The notes beneath the pieces are model-generated. The model did no database searches. It saw nothing but the letters and a program-made list of their open reading frames with translations, and had not been told where the DNA came from. From Octopus sinensis (taxonomy: Eukaryota): a stretch of DNA of 64,000 nt. The translations under genes were made by a program, and so were the position numbers. This document shows, piece by piece, positions 25,099 through 53,280 of this stretch (position 1 is its first letter; each line of letters starts with the position of its first letter). The stretch lies in the NCBI RefSeq assembly GCF_006345805.1, contig NC_043021.1, forward strand, positions 930,001-994,000. Direction: 5' to 3'.

Positions 25099-25122
25099 TC
25101 TCACACACACACACACACACAT

Positions 25123-25170
<48 letters not shown>

Positions 25171-25269: not shown

Positions 25270-25275
25270 TTTATT
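25270..25275 (-). terminator. Polyadenylation signal AATAAA, protease B
   Basis: Paralogous position to A. Confidence 0.7.
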
Positions 25276-25329
25276 AAAAAATAGTTGAGATGTCAGGTAC
25301 AATGTAGAGTTTCATCGCCTTGCAAGAAT

Positions 25330-28300: not shown

Positions 28301-28551
28301 TGCTGGAGAGCCACCAACGATTTGTTCCTCCGGGGCTGGAAAGATATTAACAAACAATATTAGCAAATATGTTAACAAAAAGCTGTGTATTGTGTTGTTG
28401 GTGGTTTAGTTGTATAGAAATATAAATTTTCTTGATAATACAATCGTGTTAAGGTCTCGAAAATTATCAAATAAAGCAATATAACAGTGAAGGGTTGTTT
28501 ACCAGCGAAACTGAGAGGAAGAGCGATTGCTAAACAAAATATAGCCAACAT
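25330..28551 (-). CDS. Secreted chymotrypsin-like S1A serine protease, copy B (CDS appears identical to A). Exons 28503-28551, 28185-28335, 27763-27884, 26664-26798, 25882-26030, 25330-25488.
   Basis: Same exons, splice sites and translation as copy A, offset by 14736-14738 bp. Confidence 0.93.
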
Positions 28552-28616
28552 GTTTGAGATTGGTGATGCTTCTGAGTCTGAAACTCTTTATGCTTCCTCG
28601 GTAATATTGCTCCTTC

Positions 28617-28623
28617 TTTTATA
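28617..28623 (-). promoter_or_regulatory. TATA box (TATAAAA) of protease B
   Basis: Same motif and 72-nt spacing to the ATG. Confidence 0.75.
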
Positions 28624-30139: not shown

Positions 30140-30205
<66 letters not shown>

Positions 30206-30224
30206 TACGTATGCATTTATATAC

Positions 30225-30279
<55 letters not shown>

Positions 30280-30289
30280 TGAATAGAAA

Positions 30290-33200: not shown

Positions 33201-33394
33201 ATTTGTTTTTTGCTCCGCCTCTGTTCTGTTTTTGTTTTTCCAACGGATTTCCTTTTTTCTTCCTGAAGAGAAAGACACAATATGGTCCCATTATTCAATC
33301 GGATTTTGGTAATTTGTGCCTTTCGAAACACGTGTAGAATGAAATAAAACGATTTCTGTTCAATCTGCGTTCAGCTCCATTTCTTCAATTCACC
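30290..33394 (+). mobile_element. Penelope-like retroelement (RT + C-terminal GIY-YIG, probably Hydra-clade type), 5'-truncated with inverted 5' pLTR piece, inserted in (TA)n
   Basis: RT: FIQFDIASFYPSI, FDVPMGSSDSAQIADLVG, GLYRDD (after a frameshift), ANFLDVTLNL. EN: AVYQCKV...TYVG...RVSNH...EWSIL...CNLC. 30436-30474 is the reverse complement of 33357-33394. (TA)n on both sides; hammerhead in the 3' pLTR. Confidence 0.9.
33260..33339 (+). ncRNA. Type I hammerhead ribozyme with intact core, in the Penelope 3' pLTR
   Basis: TTC-CTGAAGA-GAAAG...CTTTC-GAAA-C-ACGT-GTA-GAA: 3-bp stem I, 5-bp stem II plus an extension, palindromic CACGTG stem III. Predicted cleavage after GUA (A33336). Confidence 0.8.
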
Positions 33395-33455
<61 letters not shown>

Positions 33456-33498
33456 ACACACACACTCATATATATATATATATATACGTATATATATG

Positions 33499-33536
<38 letters not shown>

Positions 33537-33659
33537 TGTATACATGCATATATACAGTATGTGTGTGTATATATATATGTATATATTACAAAAGCGTAAT
33601 GGCAATAGGGTAGGGATGGTGGGAGCAAGTTTTGGTAAAACAAGAAGCTTCTAGTACTT

Positions 33660-35148
33660 ACCTGCACGTTGGCGGCAGATGCAAAGATGGTCACCTTCCA
33701 GGGACCTCGTGACAACCCAGGGACTCAGTCCTACACCTCCGACTCAGCAGACCTATTTGGGGACACCGCTGCTTTCCTTGAATGGGGAAGAGCCTAAAAA
33801 GGTGGGCTAAATATCGGATGTCACCACAGAATCCTGGCTGGTAAGCCGCGTCCAGCATGACACCCATTCAAGCAGTGGAACAACAACAGAAATTTAATTA
33901 AATAAATTAATTAAACTAATCGTTGGAACATGGAACGTGCGAACGCTCCTCGATCCTCAACACACAGAGAGATCAGAACGTTGAATAGCTCTTGTCTCCA
34001 TAGAACTGGCGAGATTTAACATCGACGTCACTGCCCTCAGTGAAAACTGAAGAGAAAGGTCCTGGTTCTTCTGAAAAGGGAAAGAAAAAGGAGAGTGAAA
34101 AATTCATGGAGTCGCTTTTGCTGTAAAATCCAGGCTTGTGAAGGAACGCTATCAATGAACGGCTTATGACTCTCCGAATACCGATCTCCGTCACCAGCTT
34201 TATGACACTGTTTTCTGCTTACGCACCTACACCTGATACTAATGACAACGTGAAGACACCTTGTACCAACAGCTGAGTGGTCTGATCTTCAATGTACCCC
34301 CAAATGACAGGCTCCTCCCCCCTCCTCCTCCTCCACCTCCTCCTCAGGGATTTCAATGCAAGAGTGTGGATTGACAACAGACTATGGAAAAATGTTATTA
34401 ACAAAGAAGGAGTCGGAAACTGCAATGAGAATAGACTCCTGCCCCTTGGGGTGTGTGCTGAACACTCTCTCTTCATCACCAACACCAAATTTCGACTCCC
34501 AAATCGCTTCAAGACCACCTGGAATCACCCCAAATCGAAACACTAGCACCTCCTAGACTACTCCATCATCCGACAAAGAGGAAAAAGAAACGTCCTTATC
34601 ACGTGAATGGCTAACAGTGCTGACGATTGCTGGCCAGGCCATCGATTAGTCATCGATCGCCTTCGAATAATGATTATCAAAAAACCAAAAACTAGAAAGA
34701 CAAAACCAGTCAGAAGAAAATTTGACAGATCGAAGCTTAACAACCTCGAGATCGGCTCCCTTTATGCATCTTCCATTCTGAAACATCTTCAATCCATCCC
34801 ATCTGACAACCAGGAAATGGATAAGGAATGGAGCACACTTCGGAAAAGCATCACTGAAGTGGATGAAAATATACTCGGGTACAGTAAAAGGAGACAGCAG
34901 ACAAGGTCTGATGACAATGATCAAGAAATCAGCCAGCTGATCGATGCAAAACGGCAGGCTGCGCCTCTCTCGTGCGCAAGGTCCAAGATCACGACACAAT
35001 AAAAGGTGAGATATCAAGACTTCAAAAGACAATGCCAAACAAAATTGAGGGATTTGCAGAACAACTGGGGGCAACAAAAAACCACTGAATTCCAGGGCTA
35101 TGCTGACGCTCGTGACCTCAGACGCTTCTACACAGCAACGAAAGAACT
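33660..35148 (+). mobile_element. Decayed RTE-BovB-like LINE 5' part (UTR + APE endonuclease)
   Basis: LIVGTWNVRTLLD, ELARFNIDVTALSE, GDFNARV-like, LFITNTKFRLPNRFKTTWNHPKSKH, DCWPGHRLV. Confidence 0.85.
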
Positions 35149-35158
35149 GATGATGATG

Positions 35159-35218
<60 letters not shown>

Positions 35219-35242
35219 GTAGTAATAATAATAATAATAATA

Positions 35243-35281
<39 letters not shown>

Positions 35282-35308
35282 ATGATGATGATGATGATGA
35301 TGATGATG

Positions 35309-35350
<42 letters not shown>

Positions 35351-35364
35351 TAATAATAATAATA

Positions 35365-36480
35365 GGGAGTATAACTCCAAACTTACAGGGAAAAATTCTA
35401 TTTTGTATTAAATCAAATTTCACAATATAAATATAATATATAAATTAGAGAAAAACTACTATCATGCAATTCAAACAATAATGGATATAAACCAAATCAT
35501 AAATCATAAATAGAATATATTTTTTAAAACATATAACTAGATCACAAAAAGTACAAAAATGAATAAACAATATATAATAATATAAAATAAGTAAAAAAAA
35601 ACTACGTACGTTTCAAGGTTATAACTTAAATTCGAATTACAATTAAATTTGAATTTAATCTAAAAACAATTCAATTTAAAGTTATAGTCACTCTTCAGGT
35701 TAACAATAATAGCAATAATAGTTAAATAAATAAGCAAATAGAATTAAACAATATTTTTTAAAGAAATAAAATCATGATTTTTTTTATAGAAGAATCTCTA
35801 TTAACTAAATTTGAAACTTAAAACATTAGGACTAGTTGCCTACAAAATTCGAAGAATTAAACTACGTTAAACTTACAAATTACAATTTTGTCTTCAATTT
35901 TGTTTTCTTTTGACACATTCTACCAGTATACGAAGTTTCAAATTGTTTAGTTAACTAGAAAATTCCGTCCATCAAAAGGAAAAGATCCCATCTTTCTTCT
36001 ACCCCTGTGAAGAGAGTGTGCTTAATATAATGATTTTAATAATTGCTATTTAATCTTCTTAGGATTGATTGAAACAGCTGTAAGGGACTGTGTCTGATTT
36101 TTGCAGATAATAATTTTTTATTAAATGCTATGTCTCTAATTTCTTATTTTCTTTTGAATGATTATAAACCATGGTTTATATATAAACCTATTGTTATATG
36201 AATATTATTATTCACAACAAATCTTTTAGAATACCTGTTAAGTGTTTTGTTTCTAGGAAAATTTTGTTGGTAAAATGTTTTGTCCCATTTCTTTCCCTTA
36301 AACATTTGCTAAAATAAAATATCTTCAATTTGCTAATCTTGCAAGTTTCTCCGTTCTGGCTGTCCTATTTGCTGTTTGTGGTTCTGATTCGTTCTGGCTA
36401 ATGGAATTTTCAATGCAATTTGGACATGATATGTAGTTTATCAAATTTCATGTCTTACAGTTCAAATCATTTATTTTGAA
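35365..36480 (-). mobile_element. Decayed Penelope-like element (GIY-YIG remnant + pLTR)
   Basis: Minus strand FKINDLNCKT*NLINYISCPNCIEN...HKQQI is a GIY-YIG remnant. The terminus gggagtataactccaaacttacaggg is shared with ~3975 and ~62050. Contains a hammerhead on the same strand. Confidence 0.65.
35600..35701 (-). ncRNA. Hammerhead ribozyme motif with a long AT-rich stem II
   Basis: Minus strand: AAC-CTGAAGA-gtgactataactttaaattgaatt...aattcgaatttaagttataacctt-GAAA-C-GTAC-GTA-GTT. Confidence 0.6.
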
Positions 36481-37261
36481 TGATTTTTCGCTTTTTTCCT
36501 TTATTTTTCTTTCTTTTTTTAACTTTATCTCAGAACTAGTTTCCAAACTGTTGACGATATGAAGGAAAAATCTCGAACACATGAAAATGGCTGTGAAAAT
36601 AGCTTCAGGGTCTGGTAAAATACCTTTGTAGGCAACCTTATTTGAATCAGTGACGTCATGTTTCAATGAGTCATCTTTAGTTATCTCCCCTGTCGCATCG
36701 CTGGCAACTAATTGGTGCACGTTACCTTGCTATAAAATGACGTGCATGGACACGTCACACACTCTCTCTTTCTTCTCCTGTACACCACCTGCGACCAGCT
36801 ATGGTGTTCTCCATCTCCGTACCTGCTATGAGACAAACTTCTTGTTGACTGAGAGGAAAGCATTGCCTTATTCAAATTCCATTCTGTTCAGTTGAAATAC
36901 TCTCATTCCGTATCGGAATAAATTCCTTATGTACATGGCGGCTTCACAATCTCACACGAGTTGTCTCTGGCTGGTTTGATTCCAACAGCTATCGAAGAAT
37001 GACCGAACATTATATTAAATTAGGGGGCTAGAAACCCACTAAACCCTTATGGACGGGGTGAAAAAAAACTGCTATAGAGAATCGAACTCTGCATCTCTCA
37101 GATTCCAGCTGAGAGCTCTGTACCATCGAACTAAACAACCCCGAACAACAGATACCGTCTTTTATAGTTTTTGAACTGTAAGAGGTATAGCGTTCGATTC
37201 TCTGTTGCGGCTTGCTGTCCACTTTTTTCCGTCTACAAGGGTATTCTATCCAATCCTCCCA

Positions 37262-37815
37262 GCTGTTCTCGCAGCTATTCTCCTGCATTCGAGATTTCCT
37301 TCTCATCTAAAATGCCAGCTCACTCGCTGCTTCAATGTTTATATTTTAAGCCAGTCGTCCATAAAAATCTTCTCACATGTTTTCATTACTTTTTGTGTCT
37401 ATCTTTTTTCTTTCTATTTTCCTTTTTCTCCGTCTTTCTATACTTTTTTCCTTTCTTCCATTTTATTCCGCCTCACGCGTAACTTTGAGCTTTTTTCTCT
37501 CTCTAAAGCTTTCATTCTACAAGTGCACATGTGTTTCCATCTGTTTGTGAATCAGTAAATGTGATTGTGCACGTGTTTTTCATGTATGCATATGTTGATT
37601 GTATGTATATTTGTATGCATGTATATGTGGGTTCGAATGAATGTATGTGTGTGTCCCTTTTCTGTTTGTACGCCCATGATTGTTCAGTTCGTGTGCTTCT
37701 TTGTCTGCAATCTCCCGACCTCCCACTTGTCCTCCCCTTGCAACAATTCCTCCCACTACCCCCCAACTTCACCTCTTCATCTTCGCCGCCTCAATTATCC
37801 ATTCTCGTCTCTCTA
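37262..37815 (+). repeat. ~550-bp sequence paralogous (roughly 85-90%) to 15930-17300, without the two insertions found there
   Basis: Colinear matches 37262-37345/15930-16012, 37346-37635/16517-16813 and 37636-37815/17111-17300. Confidence 0.85.
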
Positions 37816-38163
37816 CTACTAATACCAAAACTTCATTCCAACTAACAACGATACAAAGCTTCCTCTTTGCAATGTAGGTAACGAAAACAATGTCACATTT
37901 TAAACCGGAGAAAAGTCTTGCATATTTTTATTGTTCTGCTTACAGATTGTATTTGTAATGTGCGAATCAGTTGGTTGATTTCTTCATCTGAAAATCCAAG
38001 CTTATCTAGACTGACAAGTAGGTATTTATTTACAAAAACAAGTGGTATAAATTTAAATCTGTAGTCTGATTGTAGAAGCTGAAAATTTCGAAGCAGTTAT
38101 CCATGTATGTATGTATGTATGTATGTATGTATGTATGTATGTATGTATGTATGTATGTATGTA

Positions 38164-38232
<69 letters not shown>

Positions 38233-38439
38233 ATGTATGTATCTCTCTTCGATTTTTTAATGATTATAAATCTCCCACTGAGGAGAAAGCCGGTTTCCAG
38301 ACATTGTTTTTTTTTCTTATTTCATGTTACATTTCAATGCTTCTTTTATGATACTGTTTGTACATCGAGATGGCAAATCAAATATATGTTGTTAAAAAAT
38401 GTTTCCTTCTCTTTTCCTTACAGACCTCCACATCATTTG

Positions 38440-39370
38440 AAGCAAGGATGACTTCTCGAAGAGTGTGGCAATCCCAGATAACACTGCTAGATTTGTACCG
38501 AGTTTATGTTTGAAAAATGTTAGATACCTTACCGAATTTGTTAAAAAATCTATGTTTGTTGTGGTATATAATTAGGCGGTCAAGATCAGAAGTGGGCTCC
38601 TCATATGACCGATTCAATTTCAGTTGAATAAGTAAGACATGGACAAAATGTGCAGAACAGTCTTTTCATTTAGGGGTTCTAATGATATGAAGCCCCAAAA
38701 TCACAGTGAAGACCGCTATTTTTGCTCATCTAAGGTATACAAACACAATTCGAAGAGTGGGGAAAGCAATGTTTATCCAAATCTCTAGTATGCATTGCTA
38801 CATGTTACCCATGGTCTAGACATTCCAGTCCCATCACCACTAGGAAACCTTGAAGACATACACTTGAGTTGTGAGTCACAGGGACTTAGGATATAACATG
38901 AGCATTAAAATTAATTTCCAATATTCCCATTTGGATTTCATTCCTGAAAATCTGGAGGATGGATATGAGAAGCAGGAGTGAGGTTTCATCAAGATGGAAA
39001 GAAGATATAAGGGAAGATGGAACGTCAGTATAATGGCCAACTACTTCTGGATATTGGATTGTTAATGTCCATCAAATGTTCACAAGCAAGAGTTCCAGGC
39101 ATAGTTTTCAATTTTAGGAGCTGAACCTAAAACGAAGGAATGGAACCCTCGTAAAAATCTATTTTCACACCATTCAATTGCATTTGTGCTGTTTTGGTTT
39201 GCTTAATAAAAATAACAAATTCATTTTTATTAGTTTCGTGTTTTCCTGCCAATGTGTATTTATTTATAAATTTGGGGATATTTTACCATTAAAATTGTGA
39301 GAAAAACCTTAGGTGATGTGAAAGAGCTTCTCTGATGTTTCGAATCAGCACCACAAAAATATACTAGAAA
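38440..39370 (+). mobile_element. Decayed Chapaev3-like (CMC superfamily) DNA transposon, 3' part
   Basis: 38884-39056 reads DLGYNMSIKINFQYSHLDFIPENL...KMERRYKGRWNVSIMANYFW, matching the Chapaev3 transposase motif LGCNMSxKxHFLHSHLDxFPENL...MExRYQGxW. Confidence 0.7.
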
Positions 39371-41435
39371 AGCACTCGGAGAGCGCAGACCTCCGCCAAG
39401 CAGCTCATTTCCACCCAGTATACACGCATGCTGAAAATCGCCCAGTTTCCCAAACCTCCTTGGCGGGGGTCAAAAAAAAAATAATACAGCCATATGATTT
39501 TTTTTTTTTTTAAAGCCTTTAAAAACAGGAATCATCTGAAGCAGTTCACAACCACCAACATCATCATCATCAGCATTGTCATTGCTTCCACTTCAACCAC
39601 ATACACCGCCATCAATGTTATCATGACGGTTACCTTGACAGTCACTTTCACCACCACAACCAGTATAACCACTGCAATACCACCATCACACGACTAAAAC
39701 TATCATCAACACCACTATTACCACCATCACCTAAGCATCACACATCACACCGTTCCTGTCGCCATTATAACCGCCGAAACTATTTTATCCTCGCCCACCC
39801 CCCTATACTTATCTCAACCATTGTCATCATCAACACTGTCTCTAAGCAGCAACGCCACCATAGGTTACGTGAAAACGATGTGTTTTCAAGGGAGATAATC
39901 AAAGAACGTAAATTGTAATACTTCAATGAAAATACAACAAATGAAAAATCCTTCAAGAATCCATAAAAATTCCCGGATCACTACCAAAATTTCATCATCT
40001 GTTCCTTGTGTCATTAACAACTTTTCCTGCCAGTTTCATCAAATACCGTTCTTCCCAACATTTTGAGTTATTTTGCACACAGACGGACAAACCAACACCA
40101 ATGAAAACATAACCTCTTTCCTTGGCAGAGGTAATAAAGTAACGTAAAATTATCAAAGCAATTTCCAAATTCAAAATTCAAATTTCGCAGACCTGTGTTA
40201 TCATTATATCCAAATTTAGAATCTGGATAAATTTTTTTTTTTAAACTGGCAGTTTCGAAGCAGTTGTTCATAGTTATCTTCTTTCTCCTTAGTTATCAAA
40301 GAGATATTCAAATCAGCAGGACAGCTGACCTCTATGACGATTAAATACTTTTTCTTGCCTGTCCCAAACAACGATATCCGGCCTTTTACAGAATTTGAAC
40401 TCAGAACTTAAGTATGGACGGAACGCCTCTAAGCATTTTGCTCGGCGTTGTTACGATTCTGCCAGCTCACCGCTTGATATTCTCTCACCTTTTGATATTG
40501 AGATGAGATTCTCAGAGGATTTTCTTAATCTTATTAGCCATCTAACAAATATTACACTAAAAATCGTTCCGTTTCTTGCATAACGTTTTGAACCTCGATA
40601 ATTTTGCTTCTCCATCTTACTACTCTGTTCTAAAATCTTTTTGATATCGAGGACCAATACTATCATGTTTTGGAACATTTTCGGACCTTTTGCTTTATAC
40701 ACCCTGATACTATCCTTTGTGTGTAACCAGGTAACTGCATTTGGAAGATTAAGAGTTGGGCATGTTCTCACCATTCATAAGACTGAGTACATCTCTGTCA
40801 CGTTCTTAATTACCTTTATGAACCCGTCACAAGGGTTTGGAGTTTTTGACATGGCACTGTCTACCTTGTTCATTAATGAGTCCACCATAAGTTTCTTTAA
40901 TGTGAATCGAGCATCCATACCTCAGAGACCAATTAACAATTCATTGGGAGTAATGCCTATAAAGGTATCAGAAGTATCCTTTATGCTTTTTGGATTTAAT
41001 TTGCTATGTTTTGTCGGTGTAATTTTCATCTATTCGTTCCTCTGCCTGAGGATTAGATTTACTGACGAGGCTAATGTCTTTTTCTTCCTTTTTTTTTATT
41101 TTGGTTTATTCCACCACATCATAAAAAGGTCGGGGGCGATGTCTCCGTCAATTCCAGTCACAGTTGACAGTCTTTCATGTGTTTTAAAGTTGCTGCTGAA
41201 TTTAAACGTCTGAATGCATGCTGGAGATTCTAATGTGGGAAGGGACTAGGATTGATTTAGTTCAAACACTGAGGTAGGAGCTACCAGAAATAAAAGTGAC
41301 AGGTCTACCTTGCTTTTGTTGAGAAGTGCAAGAGTTCTACCTGCTATTTCTGGGTAATTATCTCTCACTCTATTATATCTTAGCACAAAATACACTCACT
41401 ACATCAATATCGATATTAATATTATGAAAAGGGTG

Positions 41436-41641
41436 GCGTGCTGGTAAAGTGGTTATTACGCCAGGCAAAATACTTAGCGATATTTTGCCCGTGTTCACGT
41501 TCTGAGTTCAAATTTTGCCAAGGTCGACTTGCCTTTTATCCTCTCGGGATAGATAAAATAAGTACCAGTTGAGCATTGGGGTTGATGTAATCGACTTACT
41601 CCTGAAATTGCTGGCCTTGTGCAAAAATTTGAAATCAATAT
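41436..41641 (+). mobile_element. tRNA-derived SINE, near full length
   Basis: Head ggtggcgtgctggtaaag...gttctgagttcaaatttt and body aggtcgactttgcctttatcc...ataagtaccagttgagcattggggttgatgtaatcgactt. Confidence 0.75.
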
Positions 41642-42362
41642 TAATATTAGTACCACGTGATTCACACAAATCAGGATCAACGAGGAGGTCTGGTATCACA
41701 TACATCCGATCATATCTTTATTGATATGTGCTAAAATATCTGAGAGATTGTGTAATATTCAATTGTCAGTTTTGCTAAACCATATATGGCTCATTTACCC
41801 TTCGTTTCCCCTATTGTAGCATGTACCACTTCCACATGGGATCACATAGGACTTCATTCATTACAAAACGAGGTCACATCTTTAACAAGTGGTCGCTTGC
41901 TGTTAACACAATCCCACAACATTCCTACTGGCCGACACACAATCTTCTTTATTTTTAATCCATTTTCATGGTTTCATGAGACCCCTTTTGATGACCAAGT
42001 TCACATTGTAAACATTACATATGTTGTAGTTGTTATTTTCTGTTAATGCATTCTGAGATAATGTTAGTAAGTTTGGATCTAGCTAATGATGTGTCGGAGG
42101 TATAAGGGTGTTTCGGTAGTAGTGCAGTCGTATGTTGGTGGTTGCATTGTGGTGTGTTGATAAGAAGTATGAATTGGTTGACTTATGGAAAATAATAAGC
42201 ACAAATAATGTATGACAGTGTAAAAAAAAAATGAAAGAAATATATGAAGATACCAAAATGAGGGTTAAAGTTTTCCGACTGTCAACGCCATGTTTTCGGA
42301 GAGATTTTGTGGCTTTTTTATGAGGTTTTTTGTTTAAGTCGTTTGTCGAATAAATTTCTTTG

Positions 42363-42851
42363 TTGGTAGAAATATAAACTGTCTTGAAAATGTAGACATT
42401 AAATCGTGTTAGATCAATATAATAGAGAGAGGTTGTTTACCAGCGAAACTGAGAGGAAGAGCGATTGCTAAACAAAATATAGCCAACATGTTTGAGATTG
42501 GTGATGTTTCTGAGTCTGAAACACTTTATGCTTCCTCGGTAATATTGCTCCTTCTTTTATAGCTTTAACCCTACAATGTTTTCTTTTCAAAGCGCTATGC
42601 ACAATAATCTGCAAATTCTATTTGCTCTTCTGTTGCTTTTGTGGCCATTATTGAAACACGGCGCCTCTTACAATAGCAATGAAAGACACAAGATCAACTG
42701 CTGTTTGCATCTTGCACGCACTCATTGTTGATGGACAAAAGCGTTTATCTTTGATGACAAAGACTTTTAAAACGTAAACTGAACTAAAAAGATCCATAAA
42801 AATCGAATAAAAAATTAAATACTTAAACTGGAAGTTTTTCTATTTTATTTT
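42363..42851 (-). pseudogene. Orphan protease promoter + exon 1 (copy D). Signal-peptide exon 42441-42489 with intact ATG and GT donor; no own exons 2-6 found.
   Basis: Inverted ~98% copy of 48830-49317. Exon 1 encodes MLAIFCLAIALPLSFA. Homology stops ~77 bp into intron 1. I found no IVGG/TAAHC exon between 28551 and 42363. Confidence 0.8.
42555..42561 (-). promoter_or_regulatory. TATA box (TATAAAA) of orphan copy D
   Basis: Same motif and 72-nt spacing to the ATG at 42489. Confidence 0.65.
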
Positions 42852-42954
42852 GTTGTCGACGCTTTTTGTATTGCATCGATTGAACATTAATACACCTGTG
42901 TGCGGGTATATATGTCTATGTGTGTATATGTATGTGTATATATATATATGTATA

Positions 42955-43026
<72 letters not shown>

Positions 43027-43086
43027 CTGTGTGTGTGTGTATGTATGCATGCATGCCTAGATTTGTGTATGTATGTATGTATACAC

Positions 43087-43138
<52 letters not shown>

Positions 43139-43139
43139 T

Positions 43140-43520
43140 ATCCTAGATATGACTTTAAGCTGCATCCGACAGTGAGACCCTGGTTCAGGAGTTCGAGGGT
43201 TTTGAGGAATGCGGAACAACTGCTCAACCACGATCATTCGCAGGTCTATTCTCCCCTGGAATAATAGCACCTGTCGGGGCCCCAGCTGTGGGTTAACTAG
43301 CATATGCAATGACATTCCATATGAGCGCACGGACGCAGACATTTCCTTGCTTGGTGTCAGGGTGCGTAGTAAGACGACTGGGAGTGAGAGACTCCTAGCT
43401 GTTGTCACATAAGTGAGGGGATACTCTGACATAAAACCTGCGCTTTCTCGTCATTTCTAGACATCTCGTTTCGGCCTGTCGCCAGGTTCTAATCATGAAA
43501 ACGCAGAGAGTGGTATTCGA
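43140..43520 (-). mobile_element. CR1-type LINE endonuclease fragment
   Basis: Minus strand ...RIPQNPRT...SHCRMQLKV (SLSDAA-like APE remnant), adjacent to the CR1 RT piece. Confidence 0.55.
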
Positions 43521-43591
43521 GTAGTCACAACTTATTTAGGTTGAAACAGGAATTGACTCTCCAAAATGAGACCACAGCACAAATAAATAAG

Positions 43592-43599
<8 letters not shown>

Positions 43600-43622
<23 letters not shown>

Positions 43623-44410
43623 ATTTTTGGCTCAAAAAGCAAAAAGCAAGGCCATGTAGGGGGACATGGAGTTATGTACAGGGTGGTGTTCATGTAAAGA
43701 GTTCAGGCCACTTGTGGTCAAGGGAGACTTTGAACCAAGCGGTTGTCGGCATCTTCACCATCTCGTCCGGCAGTTTATTCCACGGATCCGCAACCCGGAG
43801 GGTGTGTTGCGTGAGGTCGTCGGGCAAGTCATTTATGAAGACTAAGAACAATAAGGGCCTAAGCACTGAACCTTGAGGCACACCACTGCTCGCACTGGAG
43901 ACGTCGGACCGCGAACCATTAACTTGGACTTGGAAGGAGCGATCTGAGAGGAAGGCACCAACCCATCGTACAATATCCGGATGGAAACTATATGCTTGAA
44001 GCTTGACAAGTAATAGGCGGTGGTTTACCGAGTCAAAAGCTTTGGCAAAGTCCAATAAAACGATGTCAACAGCATCACCATCATCGAGGATGCGCGTCAC
44101 CAATTCTTCCATTACCAGTAAGTTGGTCAAGCATGATCTTTTCGGCACGAAGCCGTGTTGGGAATCAGAGATAGAGGCTGTGTTTTGGAGGTGGAGCATC
44201 ATACTTTTCTTAAGGATGGTTTCGAACATCTTGCTGATTATTGAAGTAAGGGAAACCGGTCGGTAGTTAAGCGGGTCTTCGTGGCTCCCTTTCTTGAAAA
44301 TTGGACAGATTATCGCTGTTCTCCAGTCCGCAGGTATAACACCCGTCGCCAATGACATATTGAATAGACGTGTTAAAGGCTCGCAAATGACCGGAGCCAA
44401 CGCTTTGATA
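43600..44410 (-). mobile_element. CR1-type LINE RT/3' end with an internal deletion and a (CTAA)n tail
   Basis: NYRPVSLTS, SQHGF...SCLTNL, LDFAKAFDSVNH, SGVPQGSVL. The YADD motif is deleted and the sequence jumps to RVADPWNKLP. Confidence 0.88.
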
Positions 44411-44774
44411 ACCCGGTTTCGATAAATTCAAAGACACGTTATATCTTTATATAAACGAAGATACTTCCATTACGTTTATGAATTTGTGCTGCCAGATTCC
44501 TGATGTGAAACTGTGTGTTGAAACAGATATTGTTGCATTTCGGAAGGGTCCTTTTGAGGTTTTCTTTTTGCCAAATAAACACACGTACTATACATAGCCG
44601 TTCTTCACTCGTTTCTTACTGTTCTTATTTTAACTGATGTCCAGTGTCAGGAAATCTTTCGTCACACATCTGTGACCTCTTCAGCGACACTTTCCGTCCT
44701 CGTGTGTGTGCAGGCGTGTATGCGTTCGTGTGCGTACCCTTCTCTCTGTTTCGCATATATTTATCTTTTATATA

Positions 44775-44810
<36 letters not shown>

Positions 44811-44916
44811 TACATACATATATATACATATATATATATACATATATATACATACATATATACATACATATATATACATATATATATAAATATATATATA
44901 TTATATATATATATAC

Positions 44917-45014
<98 letters not shown>

Positions 45015-45071
45015 ATACGTTTAAATATTTGTTGTGCAAGATTTTTTATGTGAAGTCGTGTGTTGAAACAG

Positions 45072-45293
45072 ATATCGTTATATTTCGGAATGGTCATATT
45101 GCCAGTTTAGCCAATAAAAACACACGCACTATATATTTGGTGTTATTTTGCTTCAGTGATATTTATTTTTTGAAATAAGATTAAGATTAATGTAAAAAAT
45201 AAATATCACTGAAGCAAAATAACACCAAATATATAGTGCGTGTGTTTTTATTGGCTAAACTGGCAATATGACCATTCCGAAATATAACGATAT
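45072..45293. repeat. Inverted repeat: 100-bp perfect arms, 22-bp spacer
   Basis: 45072-45171 is the reverse complement of 45194-45293. Confidence 0.9.
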
Positions 45294-45355
<62 letters not shown>

Positions 45356-45356
<1 letters not shown>

Positions 45357-46252
45357 GAGATGGTATCAAATGACTCCTAGCCTAGTTATGTGTAATAGAA
45401 AATAACTTGTTTACCTAAGTTTTAACATCATTTTCTTCGAAATAGTCATTTTGCACAGCAATACACCGGTGCCACTGTTCCTGGCACTTTTGAAATCCGA
45501 CCTGGAAGTCCGTAAGCGAGTCGAGGACCTTCAACGATTTGCTCTGGATCTCGATAACAGTGTTAAGACGCCGACCTTTGAGCTGCCTTTTCATCTTGGA
45601 GAAGGAATAGAAGTCCGCATGTGCTAAATCTGGTAAAAAAAAACGTGGGTGCGGAAGCGATACCATGTTGTTTTGGGCGAGAAAGTCACGAGTGAGAAGA
45701 GCTCAGTGACAGAGTGCAATGTCGTGAAGCATCCACTCCTTCGTTCTCCTCTGATCCAGTTGCTTTCGTCGAATATCCCCCTTCAAACGTTTCAAAACGT
45801 CGCAGTAGAACTCTCGTCCCCTGGGGCCCGGGTGAATTCTCGATACACAATACATTTCCGGGGGTGACGCTCGTGGCAGGTCTTTCATCGTCTTCTAGAA
45901 ATGTTTATTGGCTTTTGAAGCGCCGGTGCCTCTCGAAGCTTTGCGAATCATCCGTTGTCTCGTTGCCGTAAGCTTGCCGATGCAATGCTACATGTCTCTG
46001 TAGCAGACTTCCCAAGATTAACACAAAATTTCACGTTGGTTCTTTGTTCCTGTCCATGACAAAATCGCTGACTACAGCTTACATGGGATCACAAAAACAC
46101 AAATTTCACAACTTGCGAATTCAACACAGTGATGTCACTCTGCACACCACCTCATGAAGGCCACTGCCAGCTCTCACTGCGCACACAACCATGTACTACC
46201 TTTAGTTGGCGCGCTACAGAACAAGTGCTGGAACTTTGTTGATATCCCCTCG
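45356..46252 (-). mobile_element. Internally deleted mariner DNA transposon
   Basis: Minus strand ...PDLAHADFYSFSKMKRQLKGRR...FQKCQEQWHRCIAVQNDYFE. TIR-like ends cgagatggtatcaaa and tttgttgatatcccctcg, flanked by TA. Confidence 0.85.
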
Positions 46253-48168
46253 TACAGAAGATAAGTATATAGAAATAAATTATCCGTTAATAGATCAGAA
46301 TCTCTCCGAATTATTCTGGCTTGAAAATCCTTTAATTATGGCTGAGTTTACTGTATCTTTTTACGGAAGTACATAGTCACCTCGTAGGGTTTTGCCGATT
46401 CTTAAACCTCGCATTACATCCAAAACGCTGGCTATCGTTAAATTAAGGTAACAGTTTCATGTTTAAGTGAAACTTCCAAGATATTTCTATGAAATACTTT
46501 TTTAATCTTCTCCTCGTGGGGCTGCTCATTCTCAGTGTATGACATGACTAAACAGTTATCTCGCTATATATTCTCTAGTTATGCTGAGTGGCGCTTTCAG
46601 GGTGCATTAAGAATAAACAATTCTATGAGATGGGCCAACTCAGCCTCGTCATAGTTCCCCTGGAGTCATTGAATTAGCTCCCCGCCCCATCTTTTTTCGT
46701 GCTATAATAGAATGTTGCCGTTGGACGTCGTCATCACTTGTGCTTCAGTTGATTTGCTAACTACTAGGAGTAGTCTATGACAGCTGGTGTTGGGAGCTGG
46801 CCGTTGGCTGTTGGCTGTTGGCTGCCATTTCTAGCGTCGGAGGCGAACAATTGTACAAAGAACAAAACGACGAAATCTGTTGGGATTTTTTACGAACCAA
46901 TTGATTTTGTTGAGAGAGTTTGGATGTTATTGAAATTGCATTCGAAAAGTTACCGTTGGTCGTTGCGTTTCAGTGGATAGTCCATTATGTTGATATTCGC
47001 TAGGTTCATCCGCTGCCTGTGTCTGTTTGCCTTATCGTCTCAGCTACATTCCAAAGCTCTCTGGGTCTTGGTCGTATGTGTTATTTATACCGATTGAGAA
47101 ACTGAGAAAGGAGCGCGCCAAAAGCTGATATGGTCGCTGGAGCCTATTGCACATGATTGGCCAGATTTGTTGATGTCGTGGATACAGGTAGTTTATTGGA
47201 ATTCAGCTGGGGATTCACTCCATTGGTTATACGGCGTTTCACATAAATAAAATATGCGTGTGACCTATTCCAGGTGAAGTCGCGATTGGTCAGAATCGTT
47301 GATCACGTGGGCAACATTCCCGTGAATCGCGACATCGATTGATTGCTGAATATTCCTCATTAGTAATCAATTCTTATCATTAATTATTATCCTGGTGTCT
47401 CTACCGTTAATGGGGATAGATTCTGTCAGAAAATTCAGTTTTTAGCGAAAGTGATTTAGAGGTGGAAGAATTTATTTTAGCGAAGTTGTTTAACAGGAGT
47501 CTAGAGTCTGTTTAATTCCGATATATTCTTTGCTTTATATGCAATTATGTGGACGTTAGTGGCGGAGATGGGAGATTGTTTGAAGGAGTCTGCATCTCCT
47601 TATTAAAAGTATTTTGGAGGGAAGGAATGGCTATTCCATTGAAATCTTTTCTTTTATCAAATTGATGAGATCGAATGCGATGCTGTTGAGGTTTTCTCTC
47701 CCTTTTTTTAATGGATGTAGGAGGTTCGCGTTTTGAATGTTTTTTCGACGGAGACCCCATTCAATAAACGCCTACACAGTCACATCGCATTCTTGTTTTA
47801 GGATGAATCTTTCGAAGGCATCCATGTACCTGTGTGCAGAGATAATCCCTGCCTCTTTTTTTTTTTCTTTTGAAAAAGGCTTGTCATTGCGTGTACTTGA
47901 CTGTGTTTCTGAAGAGGCGAATGCATAGAACTTTCTAGATGGTATTTATATATTATTCAGTGAAAGAAGAATTGTGCTTTAACATCATCTCTTCGTGGGT
48001 CGTTGATAAGATTCAACATTCGATTATGTTTCCAAATTAAAGAAAAAAGCGTTCACTTTACTAATTGCAACCTGAATACCACGATATCTTGTATGAACTA
48101 TTTATACTTGTGTTTATCACAAATGTTCACTATGTATGTATGTATGTATGTATGTATATGTATGTATG

Positions 48169-48603: not shown

Positions 48604-49120
48604 CGTGTGTGAGTGAGTGTGTGAGAGTGTGTGTGTGTGTGTATATGCATATGTGTTTGCGGGCGTGTGTGTATTTGACTAGGCACGTACATACATGCAC
48701 ACGTGGCCACGTACATTCATAAACTATCGTGTATATCATTCTTCAGTCTTTGCAATAAAAACAAGCTAGTAACAAGAACATTATCATCATCATCATGAAC
48801 AACAGCAACAACAACAGCGGCAGTTTTCAAAAAATAAAATAGAAAAACTTCCAGTTTAAGTATTTAATTTTTTATTCGATTTTTATGGATCTTTTTAGTT
48901 CAGTTTACGTTTTAAAAGTCTTTGTCGTCAAAGATAAACGCTTTTGTCCATCAACAATGAGTGCGTGCAAGATGCAAACAGCAGTTGATCTTGTGTCTTT
49001 CATTGCTATTGTAAGAGGCGCCGTGTTTCAATAATGGCCACAAAAGCAACAGAAGAGCAAATAGAATTTGCAGATTATTGTGCATAGCGCTTTGAAAGGA
49101 AAACATTGTAGGGTTAAAGC

Positions 49121-49127
49121 TATAAAA
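49121..49127 (+). promoter_or_regulatory. TATA box (TATAAAA) of protease C
   Basis: Same motif and 72-nt spacing to the ATG at 49193. Confidence 0.75.
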
Positions 49128-49192
49128 GAAGGAGCAATATTACCGAGGAAGCATAAAGTGTTTCAGACTCAGAAGCATCACCAATCTCAAAC

Positions 49193-50248
49193 ATGTTGGC
49201 TATATTTTGTTTAGCAATCGTTCTTCCTCTCAGTTTCGCTGGTAAATAACTGCTCTATTATATTGATCTAACACGATTTAATGTCTACATTTTCAAGACA
49301 GTTTATATTTCTACCAATGCATCACACGACCACACCACCAACACTCCAATGCACTCAGTTTTTCTCTTAATATATTTCCAGGTCCAAAAGAACAAATCGT
49401 TGGTGGCTCTCCGGCAGCAACTTGTCAATATCCATCAATAGTTCATTTACTCATTGATACTGCTAAAGGTACTTTCGAATGTGGTGGTACACTATTGGAC
49501 AACCAGCATGTTTTGACCGCTGCCCATTGCTTGTAAGTAAAATCTCTTTCACTGGTTTTTATCTTCTATACGGTAATGGAGAAAGCTGCTTATTAATTAC
49601 ATACGTAACAACTACTAAAAGTACTCAAAGAAAGCAATTATTAAAGGGTTGACCGTCTGCAAATATTTTTATAAATTCATGTTCAAAGAAATTTCCTGTA
49701 ATTTCGATTTCTCAAGTTTCTTGAATTTTTTTAACTCCAATTTCTCGCAAATTTAAATATTCATTGCATTCACTGCGGAGCAATCCATTCTCATTTGCAA
49801 AGTCTCTCATTTTCTCTTTAAGTTTTCATTCGCTATTTGGAAAAAAACCCCCAGTTTATTCTATTAATGTGTACGTAATTTCTTATTTATTGAATGAACA
49901 TTTTTAATACACCCGTATAATTTTTGAACGCGGAATCGCTGTGAGAAGATTCTAGAAAGTTGGGTAATTACTATTAGAAGACAGGAAGAAAAACGTTACC
50001 GACAAGTACTCGAAATTTGCACCTTATTCACAGTTTCCAAACACTGTACCGCTAAGCCAATATATACATAAACAAGTTGCACGCGCGACTTCAACAGTGC
50101 CACACTTTTGCTAAAAGTATCCATTTTCTGGATGGCATGAGGCAACAAAGTCAGGGGCGTATACATCTGTAGTAATACCCTTTTATTTATACGATTTTTT
50201 CATTTCATATTTATTTCATTCATTGTTTGCAATGTTCTCTCTCCCCCT

Positions 50249-50282
<34 letters not shown>

Positions 50283-51993
50283 TACAAAGCTTACAGAGGG
50301 ACTGCTGAATTGAAATCTCTATGCTGCTTTGAGGGGAAGGTAAAACTTAACCAACTGCTTCTCCCTCTGTTGTTGGACTACCGTGATGTCTGTTTAAAAG
50401 AGAGAGATTATGATTGTGACAAAACAATGAAAGCAATACTTACTAAGCAAGTGAGCACTATTATACAAAATAATTATTAGACGTAAAATATAAACATTAT
50501 TAGAATTGGGAATCAAATATGAAAATATTGTCAAGGGGCTAGCAGAAAACCGCCTGGAGGGCGGTCTTTCTTCTAGTACAAACTAACCACGCTTCCTTAC
50601 TATTTCACAAACATCTCTCATTTAGTCACTAATGCATCGGTGGACTACGCAACAGATGAGATGGTAAATTTAAATAAATTGCTGAGTGAAATATTCTAAT
50701 TTAAATTTCCATTTATTTTCGACGGACTTTTAAACAAATATCTTACTAAGATGTCTTTGTCTTCTCATTAACCCAGTAAACTGATCCTATATTTAGGAAG
50801 AGAATCACCGCTGGCTGACAGAATGTACTATCGGACTACCAAGCAATGGCTTGATGGTTCGTGTCAACCATGGACAATATATTCAATACATAAAATGCCA
50901 ACGAAATTCTGTCCTAGAGAATTCTGTAAATGTTTTAGCCATAGCTTTAGCAAGTAGTGTTATCTTCGAATGAAAAGGTGTCAATATAAATCTCCTTTAA
51001 ACTTCAAATTCCAATATTACTAACTGCATTTTCATTAATTAAACACTCTAAAGCAAGAAGCAATCACTCCTCGTACGATTTCAGTTTATATAACTTACTT
51101 TGGTTTATGAACCCGAACTAAAGTTCTATTCCTGCCGATCTGAAATATAGATTATATTTCATATATAACTAAATATAAAAGGGATTGAAAGTAATGCACA
51201 CGTGACTTCATTTTCATTAATTTCAGCGCCCCCGGAACTCGTTCAGTTTCTGTAAATATTGGTACCAATAATAACGAACAGCCGGGTCGATATGTTATGA
51301 CAGCTACTAAATGGAAAGTACATTCTCAGTATTCTCCTGACCCCATGCGTAAGTATTTTGCAACTGATATTTAACTACATACTCTTCACAAATAATCTTA
51401 TATCTTAATATTCTTTGGGATTTATTTATGATTACTTTAACAAGGCAAAAACATAACTTTCATTTGCCGTTGATTTGAACCCGAGTTGTATAATCCGTTA
51501 CTTTCCACGGTTTGTCTGAGATTTTCCGTTCGATGTGGGCGATTCAACCTATTTCACACAAGAGTTTACACTTTTGGCATTCGAAATTGAGGAAAATCAC
51601 AAAGAAAATCATCTGAGACAGTTAGACATAGAATTAATGGATACTCAAAACTAGTCCAGAAGGAGTACAGAAATCCCCAAGGCTAAGAGTAGCAGAGTGA
51701 AGTGAATAGAGTGGGAGTTGTGCAAGAAGTATGGGTTAGAATGTAGCAACAAGTGGTATGGGCACCACCATTTACCAAGACACAGGATTGGAAGTGAAAA
51801 GAATCTGTAGACCATGGCAAAGAGAGCGATAGTCTGGCTTCAAAAGCTGCAAATACCAAACTTCACCGGAAATATTCAGTTGGCAACAATACTTGGAACA
51901 ACTCGTGTGTGGCGAAAAAATGTTGCATCTATACACTGCAGGGTGGAGCTGAAACATGACATAGATAAATTAGGAAAGGCTAAGTGAATAAAC

Positions 51994-52054
<61 letters not shown>

Positions 52055-52457
52055 GATGATGATGATCATGATGTCGACGACGATGATACTAATAACAACA
52101 ACAACCACAACAACAACAACAACAACAACAATAATAATAATAATAATAATAATGATGGGCTGATTGCTACCTAACTCAGATACCAGGAAACCCCAAAATG
52201 GCAGAAATTCAAAAGATAGTGCTCATGGGAACTGCTCATATCCTACGCAAAATACTTTCTTTGTAATCTCAAGTTTTAAAACAAACATAATTTTCGTATG
52301 GTTTTTTAGGCATTCACTAGTACAACACTAAGTACAAAACCAAATATATGGCACCCTAGGCATAACACCAACATGAACTTCCAACTTGTTGTCTCTTGAG
52401 GTCTCTGGGTGAGACTTGGAGCCAGCTTGTGCAAATGTAAAGCAAAAGTCAAACATA

Positions 52458-52497
<40 letters not shown>

Positions 52498-52703
52498 TGT
52501 TTCAAATTTTTCCTCAAGGGCAGCAGTTTTGAGGGGATGATGTTGAACTGGTACCTATTTTATCAACCCCGTAAAGATGAAAGGCAAAGTCGACTTCGGC
52601 AGAATTTGAACTCAGAACGTAGCGGCAGACGAAATACTGCAAAGCATTTCACCCAGCGTGCTAACTATTCTGCCAGCTCACCGCCTTAATAATAATAATA
52701 ATG

Positions 52704-52750
<47 letters not shown>

Positions 52751-53241
52751 CCTTTTCACTATGGGCACAAGGCCTGAATTTTTTAAGGGAGGGGACTAGT
52801 CGATTACATTAACCCCAGTGTTTCACTGGTACTTCATTTATCGACCCCGAAAGGATGAAAGGCAAAGTCGACCTCGGTGGAATTTGAACTCAGAACTAGT
52901 GACAGGCGAAATACCGCTAAGTATTTTGTCCGGCGCGCTAAAAATTCTGCCAGCTCACCACTTTAATAATAATAATAACAACAACAAAAACAACAACAAC
53001 AACAATAATAATAACAGCATCAACGACAACAATAACTATAACAATAATTTCTATTTTAAAAGGTAACGATATTGCTATGATCCGTCTGCCTAAGCCAGTG
53101 TCATTCGGAAATTGTGTGGCCCCTGCTGCTCTTCCTGCCCCAGGACAGAAATTTGATGGGAAAAAATGTATTGCAGCTGGATGGGGTAGAACTGGAGGTA
53201 GGTATTCAATTTCATTTATTAATATCTGTCTTGTGTTTGAC

Positions 53242-53280
<39 letters not shown>

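What the first reader, a model, noticed from the sequence alone, without database searches (positions are those of the whole stretch)
42363..42851. Orphan promoter + signal-peptide exon (D) could act as a distal alternative first exon for protease B
D keeps TATAAAA, ATG, an in-frame 16-aa signal peptide and a GT donor but has no exons 2-6 of its own. It lies on the same strand as B, ~14 kb upstream, and its phase-1 donor fits B's exon-2 acceptor at 28335. Its exon is identical to A/B exon 1, so D1-B2 splicing would give exactly protein B. Its upstream promoter, however, is ~98% C-type, so B-type enzyme could be driven by C-type regulation. D also sits head-to-head with C as a 488-bp inverted repeat ~6 kb apart.
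Basis: partly seen in the sequence, partly recalled or inferred. Interest (0 to 1): 0.72.

Follow-up and report, generated by a model that had tools for sequence, protein, structure and literature searches.

The report
Orphan first exon in octopus proteases
Between two salivary-gland (venom-gland) protease genes of the octopus lies a stray copy of just a gene's start (promoter, signal-peptide exon, splice donor) that is at least about 34 million years old. It is kept fresh by copying from its neighbours, and it could serve, as one RefSeq gene model already assumes, as a second start site for the next protease gene, though its use is not proven.

Summary
The window is Octopus sinensis CM016883.1:930001-994000. 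It holds three complete six-exon S1 (trypsin-fold) protease genes: A and B, with identical CDS, on the minus strand, and C on the plus strand. D (42363-42851, minus) is an orphan 5' module: about 290 nt of promoter, TATAAAAG, a 43-nt 5'UTR, the 49-nt signal-peptide exon, a GT donor and 77 nt of intron 1. It forms a 489-nt, 98% inverted repeat with C's 5' end, 5,979 bp away. No exon 2-6 remnants follow it.

New findings:
- D sits at the same site, with the same 3' breakpoint, in O. vulgaris and O. bimaculoides, so it is at least about 34 My old. It is absent from the Argonauta locus.
- D evolves in concert with C. Seventeen species-specific sites are shared by D and C, none is D-versus-C, and the tree splits by species at 100/100.
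- The gene index already places a 254-aa product identical to A/B on a 49-nt CDS piece that is exactly D's exon.

Caveats: O. vulgaris gene A's first exon is 100% identical to O. sinensis D's, so that model could be a mapping artefact. D is also no more conserved than the neutral spacer. The alternative first exon is plausible and already annotated, but unproven.

The parts
42363..42851 (-). D: orphan 5' module (promoter, 5'UTR, exon 1, donor, 77 nt of intron 1). It is one arm of the inverted repeat.
   Evidence: blastn: 98.2% over 489 nt to 48831-49317 in inverted orientation; alignments.
42554..42561 (-). TATA box TATAAAAG of D
   Evidence: Read from the sequence. Identical in all 11 modules of the three species.
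42490..42532 (-). Predicted 5'UTR of D. The TSS is inferred at about 42532 (AGCATAAAG), 30 nt downstream of the TATA box.
   Evidence: Inferred by homology to the O. bimaculoides RNA-seq contig L007, whose 5' end starts at AGCATAAAG. Not measured for D.
42441..42489 (-). D exon 1 CDS: MLAIFCLAIALPLSFA plus 1 nt (signal peptide, phase 1).
   Evidence: 49/49 identical to A/B exon 1. The gene index places a 254-aa product identical to A/B on exactly this range.
42439..42440 (-). GT of the 5' splice donor (CTG|GTAAAC)
   Evidence: The donor context is identical to that of A and B.
42363..42438 (-). Remnant of intron 1. Homology to C stops at TTTCTACCAA, about 60 nt short of C's exon 2.
   Evidence: The same breakpoint is seen in O. 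vulgaris and O. bimaculoides.
48831..49317 (+). 5' module of gene C, the other arm of the inverted repeat and D's gene-conversion partner.
49193..58032 (+). Gene C (chymotrypsin-1, XP_029651131.1), six exons.
   Evidence: tblastn; protein P0004.
25330..28551 (-). Gene B CDS. Exons: 28551-28503, 28335-28185, 27884-27763, 26798-26664, 26030-25882, 25488-25330. Exon 2's acceptor at 28335 is the proposed target of D's donor.
   Evidence: The translation equals P0001. Pfam Trypsin E=1e-49.
10594..13813 (-). Gene A. Its CDS is 765/765 identical to B.
   Evidence: The A and B units are 98.5% identical over 5.4 kb.
28336..42440 (-). Putative 14,105-nt intron of a D1-B2 transcript. It contains B's own promoter and exon 1, TE fragments on the + strand, and 16 AATAAA plus 12 ATTAAA on the minus strand.
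33753..33867 (-). Cryptic exon (ATG...ATAG|GT, phase 1). The O. vulgaris annotation splices it into B's exon 2.
43294..46638 (.). Insertion in the D-C spacer specific to the O. sinensis/O. vulgaris lineage. It carries a LINE RT fragment (43693-44427, minus) and a mariner-like fragment (45418-45702, minus).
   Evidence: Pfam RVT_1 E=1.3e-22. The block is absent from O. bimaculoides.

Best explanation
D is a partial, 5'-end-only copy of a posterior-salivary-gland-type S1 protease gene. It holds about 290 nt of upstream promoter, a TATA box, a 43-nt 5'UTR, the 49-nt signal-peptide exon, its GT donor and 77 nt of intron 1.

SHOWN:
- It arose before O. bimaculoides split from O. sinensis/O. vulgaris (about 34 My ago, PMC10700109). 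It sits between the divergently oriented A/B-type and C-type genes, on the A/B strand.
- Repeated gene conversion has kept it nearly identical to C's 5' end, which lies 4-6 kb away in inverted orientation.
- In O. sinensis it also carries a short A/B-type patch (the Ala10 codon and the GTAAAC donor).
- The 135-nt core from the TATA region to the donor is homogenised among all modules (A/B, C and D).

INFERRED:
- D carries a copy of an active promoter and a donor but has no exons of its own. The only productive fate of a D transcript is therefore to splice across 14.1 kb to exon 2 of the next same-strand gene, B (phase 1 to phase 1), skipping B's acceptor-less exon 1.
- In O. sinensis this gives exactly the A/B pre-pro-protease. 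RefSeq holds such a model.

I judge D most likely to be a minor or conditional distal alternative promoter and first exon. I think its long persistence owes more to gene conversion than to selection on D itself.
For: - Anatomy and phase compatibility.
- D1 plus B exons 2-6 equals P0001.
- The gene index records the identical 254-aa product on the 49-nt D exon. Three XP accessions with isoform X1/X2 names share this sequence.
- D is orthologous in O. vulgaris: 805 nt including unique flanks, 98.3%.
- D is orthologous in O. bimaculoides: flank match plus the same 3' breakpoint, with TATA, ATG, ORF and GT intact and one synonymous change.
- D is absent from the Argonauta head-to-head pair.
- Concerted evolution: 17 species-specific sites shared by D and C versus 0 D-versus-C sites. 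The tree splits by species at 100/100, and D is monophyletic in 0% of bootstrap trees.
- In the core, 4 sites are species-specific in all modules and 0 are paralogue-specific.
- The TSS position is supported by an O. bimaculoides RNA contig of the C-type gene.
- A second annotation (O. vulgaris) also splices an upstream exon from within the D-B interval into B's exon 2.
- TE ORFs inside the putative intron are antisense to it. This is anecdotal.
Against: - No read-level evidence was available to me.
- The O. vulgaris and O. bimaculoides annotations call nothing at D.
- O. vulgaris gene A's first exon (92 nt, TSS to donor) is identical to O. sinensis D's. A, B and D also share the last 67 nt before the donor, so the RefSeq isoform could come from mis-assigned or cross-population reads.
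- D is not significantly more conserved than the alignable spacer. Os-Ob divergence is 6.1% for D versus 8.6% for the spacer, Fisher p=0.09.
- The 14-kb path contains B's own active promoter and 28 poly(A) hexamers, about the chance number.
- Ob_D has a 15-nt deletion in the proximal promoter.
Confidence: 0.5

Rival explanations
1. D is an inert relic. It is a dead 5' fragment that looks intact only because gene conversion from the selected C and A/B modules keeps overwriting it. The RefSeq D-initiated isoform is a read or cDNA placement artefact.
For: - Concerted evolution fully explains the intact TATA, ATG, ORF and GT.
- D shows no excess conservation over the neutral spacer.
- No gene is called at D in two other annotated genomes.
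- The first exon of O. vulgaris gene A is identical to Os_D, and A, B and D are identical for the last 67 nt of exon 1.
- About 2.2 kb of neutral spacer has also survived 34 My, so survival alone does not argue for function.
Against: - D's promoter is 98-99.8% identical over about 360 nt to that of a gene family that dominates salivary-gland expression (PMC7656900). It lies in the same intergenic region as C's regulatory DNA, so complete silence would need an explanation.
- The RefSeq model exists.
- D's orientation on the A/B strand is conserved in three species.
Confidence: 0.38
2. D's promoter is active but its transcripts are not protein-productive. They would end early or splice to cryptic exons. 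Any effect would be regulatory: promoter competition or interference with C and B, or service as a sequence reservoir for gene conversion among 5' modules.
For: - There are 28 poly(A) hexamers and TE fragments in the 14-kb path.
- A cryptic phase-1 exon at 33867-33753 is used in the O. vulgaris model.
- D exchanges sequence with both C and A/B.
Against: There is no direct evidence for such transcripts. The O. vulgaris 412-aa model is a B-to-A chimera typical of predictor errors in tandem duplicates.
Confidence: 0.1
3. D is an assembly artefact, a very recent duplication, or a LINE-transduced or processed retrocopy of C.
For: D is 98% identical to C. A LINE RT fragment lies just upstream of D in the same orientation.
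Against: - D is present with the same flanks and breakpoint in three independent assemblies.
- The LINE block 43294-46638 is missing in O. bimaculoides, which nevertheless has D.
- D contains promoter and intron sequence, so it is not a processed copy.
Confidence: 0.02

Closest known systems
Alternative promoters with alternative first exons spliced to a common exon 2 and yielding the same protein (for example the tissue-specific first exons of CYP19A1; cited from general knowledge)
   Same: A distal promoter with its own first exon and donor, a common exon-2 acceptor, an unchanged protein and a purely regulatory difference.
   Different: D's first exon is coding (the signal peptide). It is a paralogous duplicate whose promoter is the neighbouring gene's type. 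Its use is only modelled by RefSeq and has not been shown.
Variable-first-exon clusters such as protocadherin and UGT1A (general knowledge)
   Same: Each first exon has its own promoter and is spliced in cis to shared downstream exons.
   Different: Here there are only two candidate first exons per gene and they encode the same peptide. There is no diversity function.
Concerted evolution of inverted repeats and palindrome arms by intrachromosomal gene conversion, such as the Y-chromosome palindromes or the 5' regions of duplicated genes (general knowledge)
   Same: Arms a few kb apart stay 95-99.8% identical within a species while orthologues diverge. The spacer is not inverted.
   Different: The arms are only about 490 nt long. 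One arm is an orphan fragment. The core also exchanges sequence with direct-orientation paralogues A and B.
Cephalopod posterior-salivary-gland S1 peptidases (the SP1-Abd, SP1-Oct and O. kaurna 'S1 type peptidase' clade; PMC7656900)
   Same: Genes A, B and C are 81-86% identical to these proteins. They have the trypsin fold, the catalytic triad motifs and a secretory signal.
   Different: Expression of these particular genes in the gland was not checked here. D itself encodes only the signal peptide.

Membership tests
S1 (chymotrypsin-fold) serine peptidase, Pfam PF00089 (genes A, B, C) | Full-length match to the Trypsin domain above the curated cut-off | tested here: met
   E=1e-49, 169.8 bits against a cut-off of 20.6, profile positions 1-220 of 220.
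S1 (chymotrypsin-fold) serine peptidase, Pfam PF00089 (genes A, B, C) | Catalytic His, Asp and Ser motifs and the N-terminal IVGG of the mature enzyme | tested here: met
   IVGG, TAAHC, NDIAMIRL and GDSGGP are present in the spliced product. Ser is six residues before the catalytic Ser (inferred to be the chymotrypsin-189 position), which suggests chymotrypsin-like rather than trypsin-like specificity (inference).
Cephalopod posterior-salivary-gland S1 clade | Closest relatives are gland-derived cephalopod S1 peptidases | tested here: met
   86% to SP1-Abd-13, 81% to the O. kaurna S1 type peptidase, and only 36% or less to non-cephalopod proteases.
Cephalopod posterior-salivary-gland S1 clade | Gland-specific expression and secretion | not testable with these tools
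   No O. sinensis or O. vulgaris transcript contig encodes these exact proteins in the collection. The literature gives family-level evidence only (PMC7656900).
Alternative first exon / alternative promoter of gene B | Core promoter and a TSS of its own | tested here: inconclusive
   TATAAAAG and the Inr-region sequence are identical to those of C. C's TSS is supported by an O. bimaculoides RNA contig. No TSS data exist for D.
Alternative first exon / alternative promoter of gene B | Functional 5' splice site in a phase compatible with the shared exon 2 | tested here: met
   CTG|GTAAAC is identical to A's and B's own donor. Both sides are phase 1. D1 plus B2-6 equals P0001.
Alternative first exon / alternative promoter of gene B | Transcripts joining D exon 1 to B exon 2 | tested here: inconclusive
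   The gene index has the 254-aa product on the 49-nt D exon, with X1/X2 isoform names. However, exon-1 identity among A, B, D and O. vulgaris A allows an artefact.
Alternative first exon / alternative promoter of gene B | Selective constraint on the module beyond neutral expectation | tested here: not met
   Os-Ob mismatches are 28/457 in D versus 189/2199 in the spacer, p=0.09. Os-Ov mismatches are 6/471 versus 33/5713, p=0.12.
Gene-conversion-homogenised repeat (concerted evolution) | Paralogues within a species are more alike than orthologues between species, despite a single origin at an orthologous site | tested here: met
   Shared flanks and breakpoint. Site counts are 17 versus 0. The tree splits by species at 100/100.
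NAHR-mediated inversion between inverted repeats | Spacer orientation differs between genomes | tested here: not met
   The spacer is colinear in O. sinensis, O. vulgaris and O. bimaculoides.

The most novel reading that the evidence does not exclude
The unit of concerted evolution in this venom-gland protease cluster is the '5' module': core promoter, 5'UTR, signal-peptide exon and donor. It is homogenised by gene conversion among all paralogues while the mature-enzyme exons diverge. D would be a selectively retained spare module. It would let an A/B-type enzyme be driven by C-type upstream control, and it would serve as a go-between and reservoir for conversion between the inverted C gene and the direct-orientation A/B genes. 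That would give a concrete mechanism for the conserved-signal, divergent-mature-region pattern often described for secreted toxin gene families.
Probability: 0.15. Interest if true: 0.55.

Novelty: new member of a known kind. Interest (0 to 1): 0.35.

Why it matters
If D is used, two nearly identical venom-gland proteases could be produced under the control region of a third, diverged paralogue. That would be a simple way to rewire expression after gene duplication. D would also be a clean natural example of a promoter-plus-signal-exon cassette that has persisted for about 34 My.

Even if D is inert, the locus shows gene conversion acting on just the first roughly 135-490 nt of a gene family. 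This is relevant to why signal-peptide and 5' regions of secreted or venom gene families stay uniform.

There is also a practical lesson for annotation. First exons identical among paralogues can generate isoforms that cannot be validated from short reads.

Tried and rejected
- Exon 2-6 remnants downstream of D: none (tblastn).
- Transcript contigs (Logan) encoding the exact A/B or C protein of O. sinensis or O. vulgaris, to read their 5'UTRs: none. Only the NCBI chromosomes carry them. The one RNA contig found (L007, O. bimaculoides) is a C1-C2 mRNA.
- Literature search for the four XP accessions: no paper.
- LINE 3'-transduction or retrocopy origin, suggested by an RT fragment just upstream of D. 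Rejected because that block is a later insertion absent from O. bimaculoides, and because D carries promoter and intron sequence.
- Inversion of the spacer by recombination between the arms: not seen.
- Conservation test for selection on D: not significant.
- Homology between the sequence downstream of D and that upstream of D, as a tandem-duplication signature: only dispersed repeats were found. Whether D is the original first exon of the A/B-type gene or a later inverted copy of C's 5' end stays open.
- My first reading, that all Os_D-specific states came from A/B, was revised. GAAAAG, gaaAcatc and CCTCTCTC are ancestral states. Only GCT and GTAAAC are derived A/B-type states.
- The O. bimaculoides A/B-type protein could not be completed for a transcript look-up, because exon 5 lies in an assembly gap.

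Full report
WHAT IS THERE.
The window is eukaryotic. It equals Octopus sinensis chromosome record CM016883.1, bases 930001-994000, on the plus strand. Three loci fetched by exact-protein look-up are base-for-base identical to it.

It contains three complete six-exon genes for secreted S1 (trypsin-fold) proteases:
- A: minus strand, CDS 13813 to 10594.
- B: minus strand, 28551 to 25330.
- C: plus strand, 49193 to 58032.

The spliced B product hits Pfam Trypsin at E=1e-49 and carries IVGG, TAAHC, NDIAMIRL and GDSGGP. The A and B CDSs are identical at 765/765 nt, inside a 5.4-kb tandem unit that is 98.5% identical. The A/B protein is P0001, named 'trypsin, alkaline B isoform X1/X2', with three XP accessions. 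C is P0004, 'chymotrypsin-1'. The nearest relatives are the cephalopod posterior-salivary-gland S1 peptidases: SP1-Abd-13 at 86% and the O. kaurna S1 type peptidase at 81%. This clade dominates expression in that venom gland in several octopods (PMC7656900).

THE OBSERVATION.
D (42363-42851, minus strand) matches C's 5' end (48831-49317) in inverted orientation at 98.2% over 489 nt, with a 5,979-bp spacer. Its 193-nt core matches A and B at 92.7%.

D carries these features:
- TATAAAAG at 42561-42554.
- A predicted TSS near 42532.
- ATG at 42489.
- A 49-nt exon ending at 42441 (MLAIFCLAIALPLSFA plus 1 nt).
- The donor CTG|GTAAAC.
- 77 nt of intron 1.

Homology to C stops about 60 nt short of C's exon 2. 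No exon 2-6 remnant lies anywhere near D. D's exon is identical to A/B exon 1 and differs from C's by one base (Ala10 versus Val10). D1 plus B exons 2-6 translates exactly to P0001, and the intron would be 14,105 nt with phase 1 on both sides. The only error is that the two '5'-UTR tags' are not private to D.

D IS OLD AND ORTHOLOGOUS.
- O. vulgaris: D lies at the same place. An 805-nt stretch including unique flanks is 98.3% identical.
- O. bimaculoides: the unique upstream flank is present and the same 3' breakpoint, TTTCTACCAA|CAA, is used. D there keeps TATAAAAG, the ATG, all 16 codons (one synonymous change) and G|GTAAAT. That species has a single A/B-type gene, and D lies 6.4 kb upstream of it on the same strand.
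- Argonauta hians: the two genes form a simple head-to-head pair with ATGs 2.65 kb apart. No third module exists in the 24.7-kb locus.

By the dates quoted in PMC10700109, D is at least about 34 My old. The A/B tandem duplication is younger: it is present in O. sinensis and O. vulgaris and absent in O. bimaculoides. An assembly artefact, a recent duplication and LINE transduction are all excluded. The RT-bearing block 43294-46638 is a later insertion absent from O. bimaculoides.

CONCERTED EVOLUTION.
Over 497 aligned columns, 17 sites carry a species-specific state shared by D and C. No site separates D from C across species. Mismatch-only identities are:
- Os_D/Os_C 98.5%, Ov_D/Ov_C 99.6%, Ob_D/Ob_C 95.4%.
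- Os_D/Ob_D 93.9%, Os_C/Ob_C 92.5%.

A maximum-likelihood tree splits {Ob_D, Ob_C} from the four O. sinensis/O. vulgaris sequences with 100/100 support. D is monophyletic in 0% of bootstrap trees, and Ov_D nests among the C sequences.

Within the 135-nt core, from the TATA region to the donor, 4 sites are species-specific in all modules, the A/B-type included. None is paralogue-specific. In contrast, the mature-enzyme exons of the A/B type are clearly orthologous: Os_AB/Ob_AB are 92.6% identical, against 79-85% to C. Synteny with the flanking HEAT-repeat gene is also conserved.

The states that distinguish O. sinensis D sort as follows:
- GAAAAG, gaaAcatc and CCTCTCTC are retained ancestral states.
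- GCT (Ala10) and GTAAAC are derived A/B-type states, implying a short A/B-to-D conversion tract.
- O. vulgaris D has recently been overwritten by C.

The spacer is colinear in all three species, so the exchange is conversion without inversion.

IS D USED?
For:
- The index of called genes gives a third position for the exact P0001 product, and its recorded range is 42441-42489, D's exon. A 49-nt range cannot encode 254 residues, so the other CDS pieces must be shared with another record.
- The O. vulgaris annotation independently splices an upstream exon (window 33867-33753, inside the D-B interval) into B's exon 2. That 412-aa model then runs from B exon 4 into A exon 2, which looks like a predictor chimera.

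Against:
- Nothing is called at D in O. vulgaris or O. bimaculoides.
- No transcript contigs for these exact proteins exist in the collection.
- The first exon of O. vulgaris gene A (92 nt, TSS to donor) is identical to O. sinensis D's. A, B and D also share the last 67 nt of exon 1. Cross-population, allelic or short junction reads would therefore place on D1 as well as, or better than, on B1.
- D is not significantly more conserved than the alignable spacer. Os-Ob divergence is 6.1% versus 8.6%, p=0.09. Between O. sinensis and O. vulgaris D is if anything more diverged, 1.3% versus 0.6%.
- Gene conversion from selected partners is enough to explain D's intact signals.

VERDICT.
Shown:
- the anatomy;
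- an age of at least 34 My;
- concerted evolution with C and patchwise exchange with A/B;
- the existence of an annotated D-initiated CDS.

Inferred:
- D's promoter fires;
- its transcripts reach B's exon 2 in vivo.

I put about 0.5 on D being a minor or conditional distal alternative promoter and first exon. I put about 0.4 on an inert relic kept intact by conversion, with an artefactual RefSeq isoform, and about 0.1 on non-productive or regulatory transcription.

The kind of thing is known: alternative first exons arising from 5' duplications, and gene conversion between nearby repeats. This is a new, tidy example rather than a new category.

Noticed in passing
window 9882-15326 vs 24585-30089: A and B are a young tandem duplication: 98.5% identity over 5.4 kb, identical CDS and a period of 14,738 bp. 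O. vulgaris has it too (period 12,753 bp) but O. bimaculoides has a single A/B-type gene. Further shared blocks (15938-17335 vs 37274-37847) show that the original unit was longer and was later broken up by insertions.
   Followed up: partly
window 33753-33867 (minus); L005 10001-10115: This is a cryptic ATG-containing exon with a phase-1 donor (ATAG|GT). The O. vulgaris 412-aa model (CAI9740466.1) uses it as its first coding exon, spliced to B exon 2. The model then joins B exon 4 to A exon 2, so it is probably a chimeric prediction across the tandem pair.
   Followed up: partly
window 28335-28321 (B), 49382ff (C): The pro-peptide is only 5 residues long (APEEQ|IVGG in A/B, GPKEQ|IVGG in C, EPDEH|IVGG in O. 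bimaculoides C). It ends in Gln or His, not Arg or Lys, so zymogen activation cannot be by a trypsin-like cut. Ser six residues before the catalytic Ser (inferred chymotrypsin-189 position) suggests chymotrypsin-like specificity.
   Followed up: no
window 14767-15087, 29532-29855, 41458-41602, 52482-52977: A short dispersed or tandem repeat family of about 117-146 nt (77-86% identity) lies upstream of the A and B promoters, 1 kb downstream of D and inside a C intron.
   Followed up: no
window 19729-20811 vs 21571-22659; 21953-23510: The A-B intergenic region holds two 97%-identical copies of a retroelement segment and RT / zf-RVT ORF fragments, all on the minus strand. TE ORFs in the D-B interval (30447-32648, 34607-34999) are on the plus strand, that is, antisense to a putative D-to-B transcript.
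   Followed up: no
window 26901-27328 (and 12165-12590 in A): A retroelement ORF fragment (…VLWDINIPTDRVIEARRPDLVVVDKENRKCQIIDF…) sits in sense orientation inside intron 3 of both A and B. It was therefore inserted before the tandem duplication.
   Followed up: no
window <594-6016 (+): This is the 3' part of a 1,234-aa HEAT/ARM-repeat gene (DUF4042), tail-to-tail with gene A. The same neighbour flanks the A/B-type gene in O. vulgaris and O. bimaculoides, so synteny is conserved.
   Followed up: no
L008 3146-3205 and L008 ~3440 (O. bimaculoides D): Ob_D's homology to C extends about 60-85 nt further upstream than in O. sinensis, bounded by a direct repeat ACTTCCAGTTT(A/C)AGTA. Ob_D also lacks 15 nt (TATTGTGCATAGCGC) of the proximal promoter. 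An assembly gap (L008 3729-4530) follows D directly.
   Followed up: no
L008 13011-13379: Exon 5 of the O. bimaculoides A/B-type gene falls in an assembly gap. This explains the truncated 153-aa RefSeq model XP_014768492.1.
   Followed up: partly
window 42880-43140, 44780-45360, 58450-59540 and many others: Long compound microsatellites, (CA)n, (TA)n and (ATAC/ATGT)n, border D and fill much of the intergenic DNA. They create long spurious ORFs in six-frame scans.
   Followed up: no
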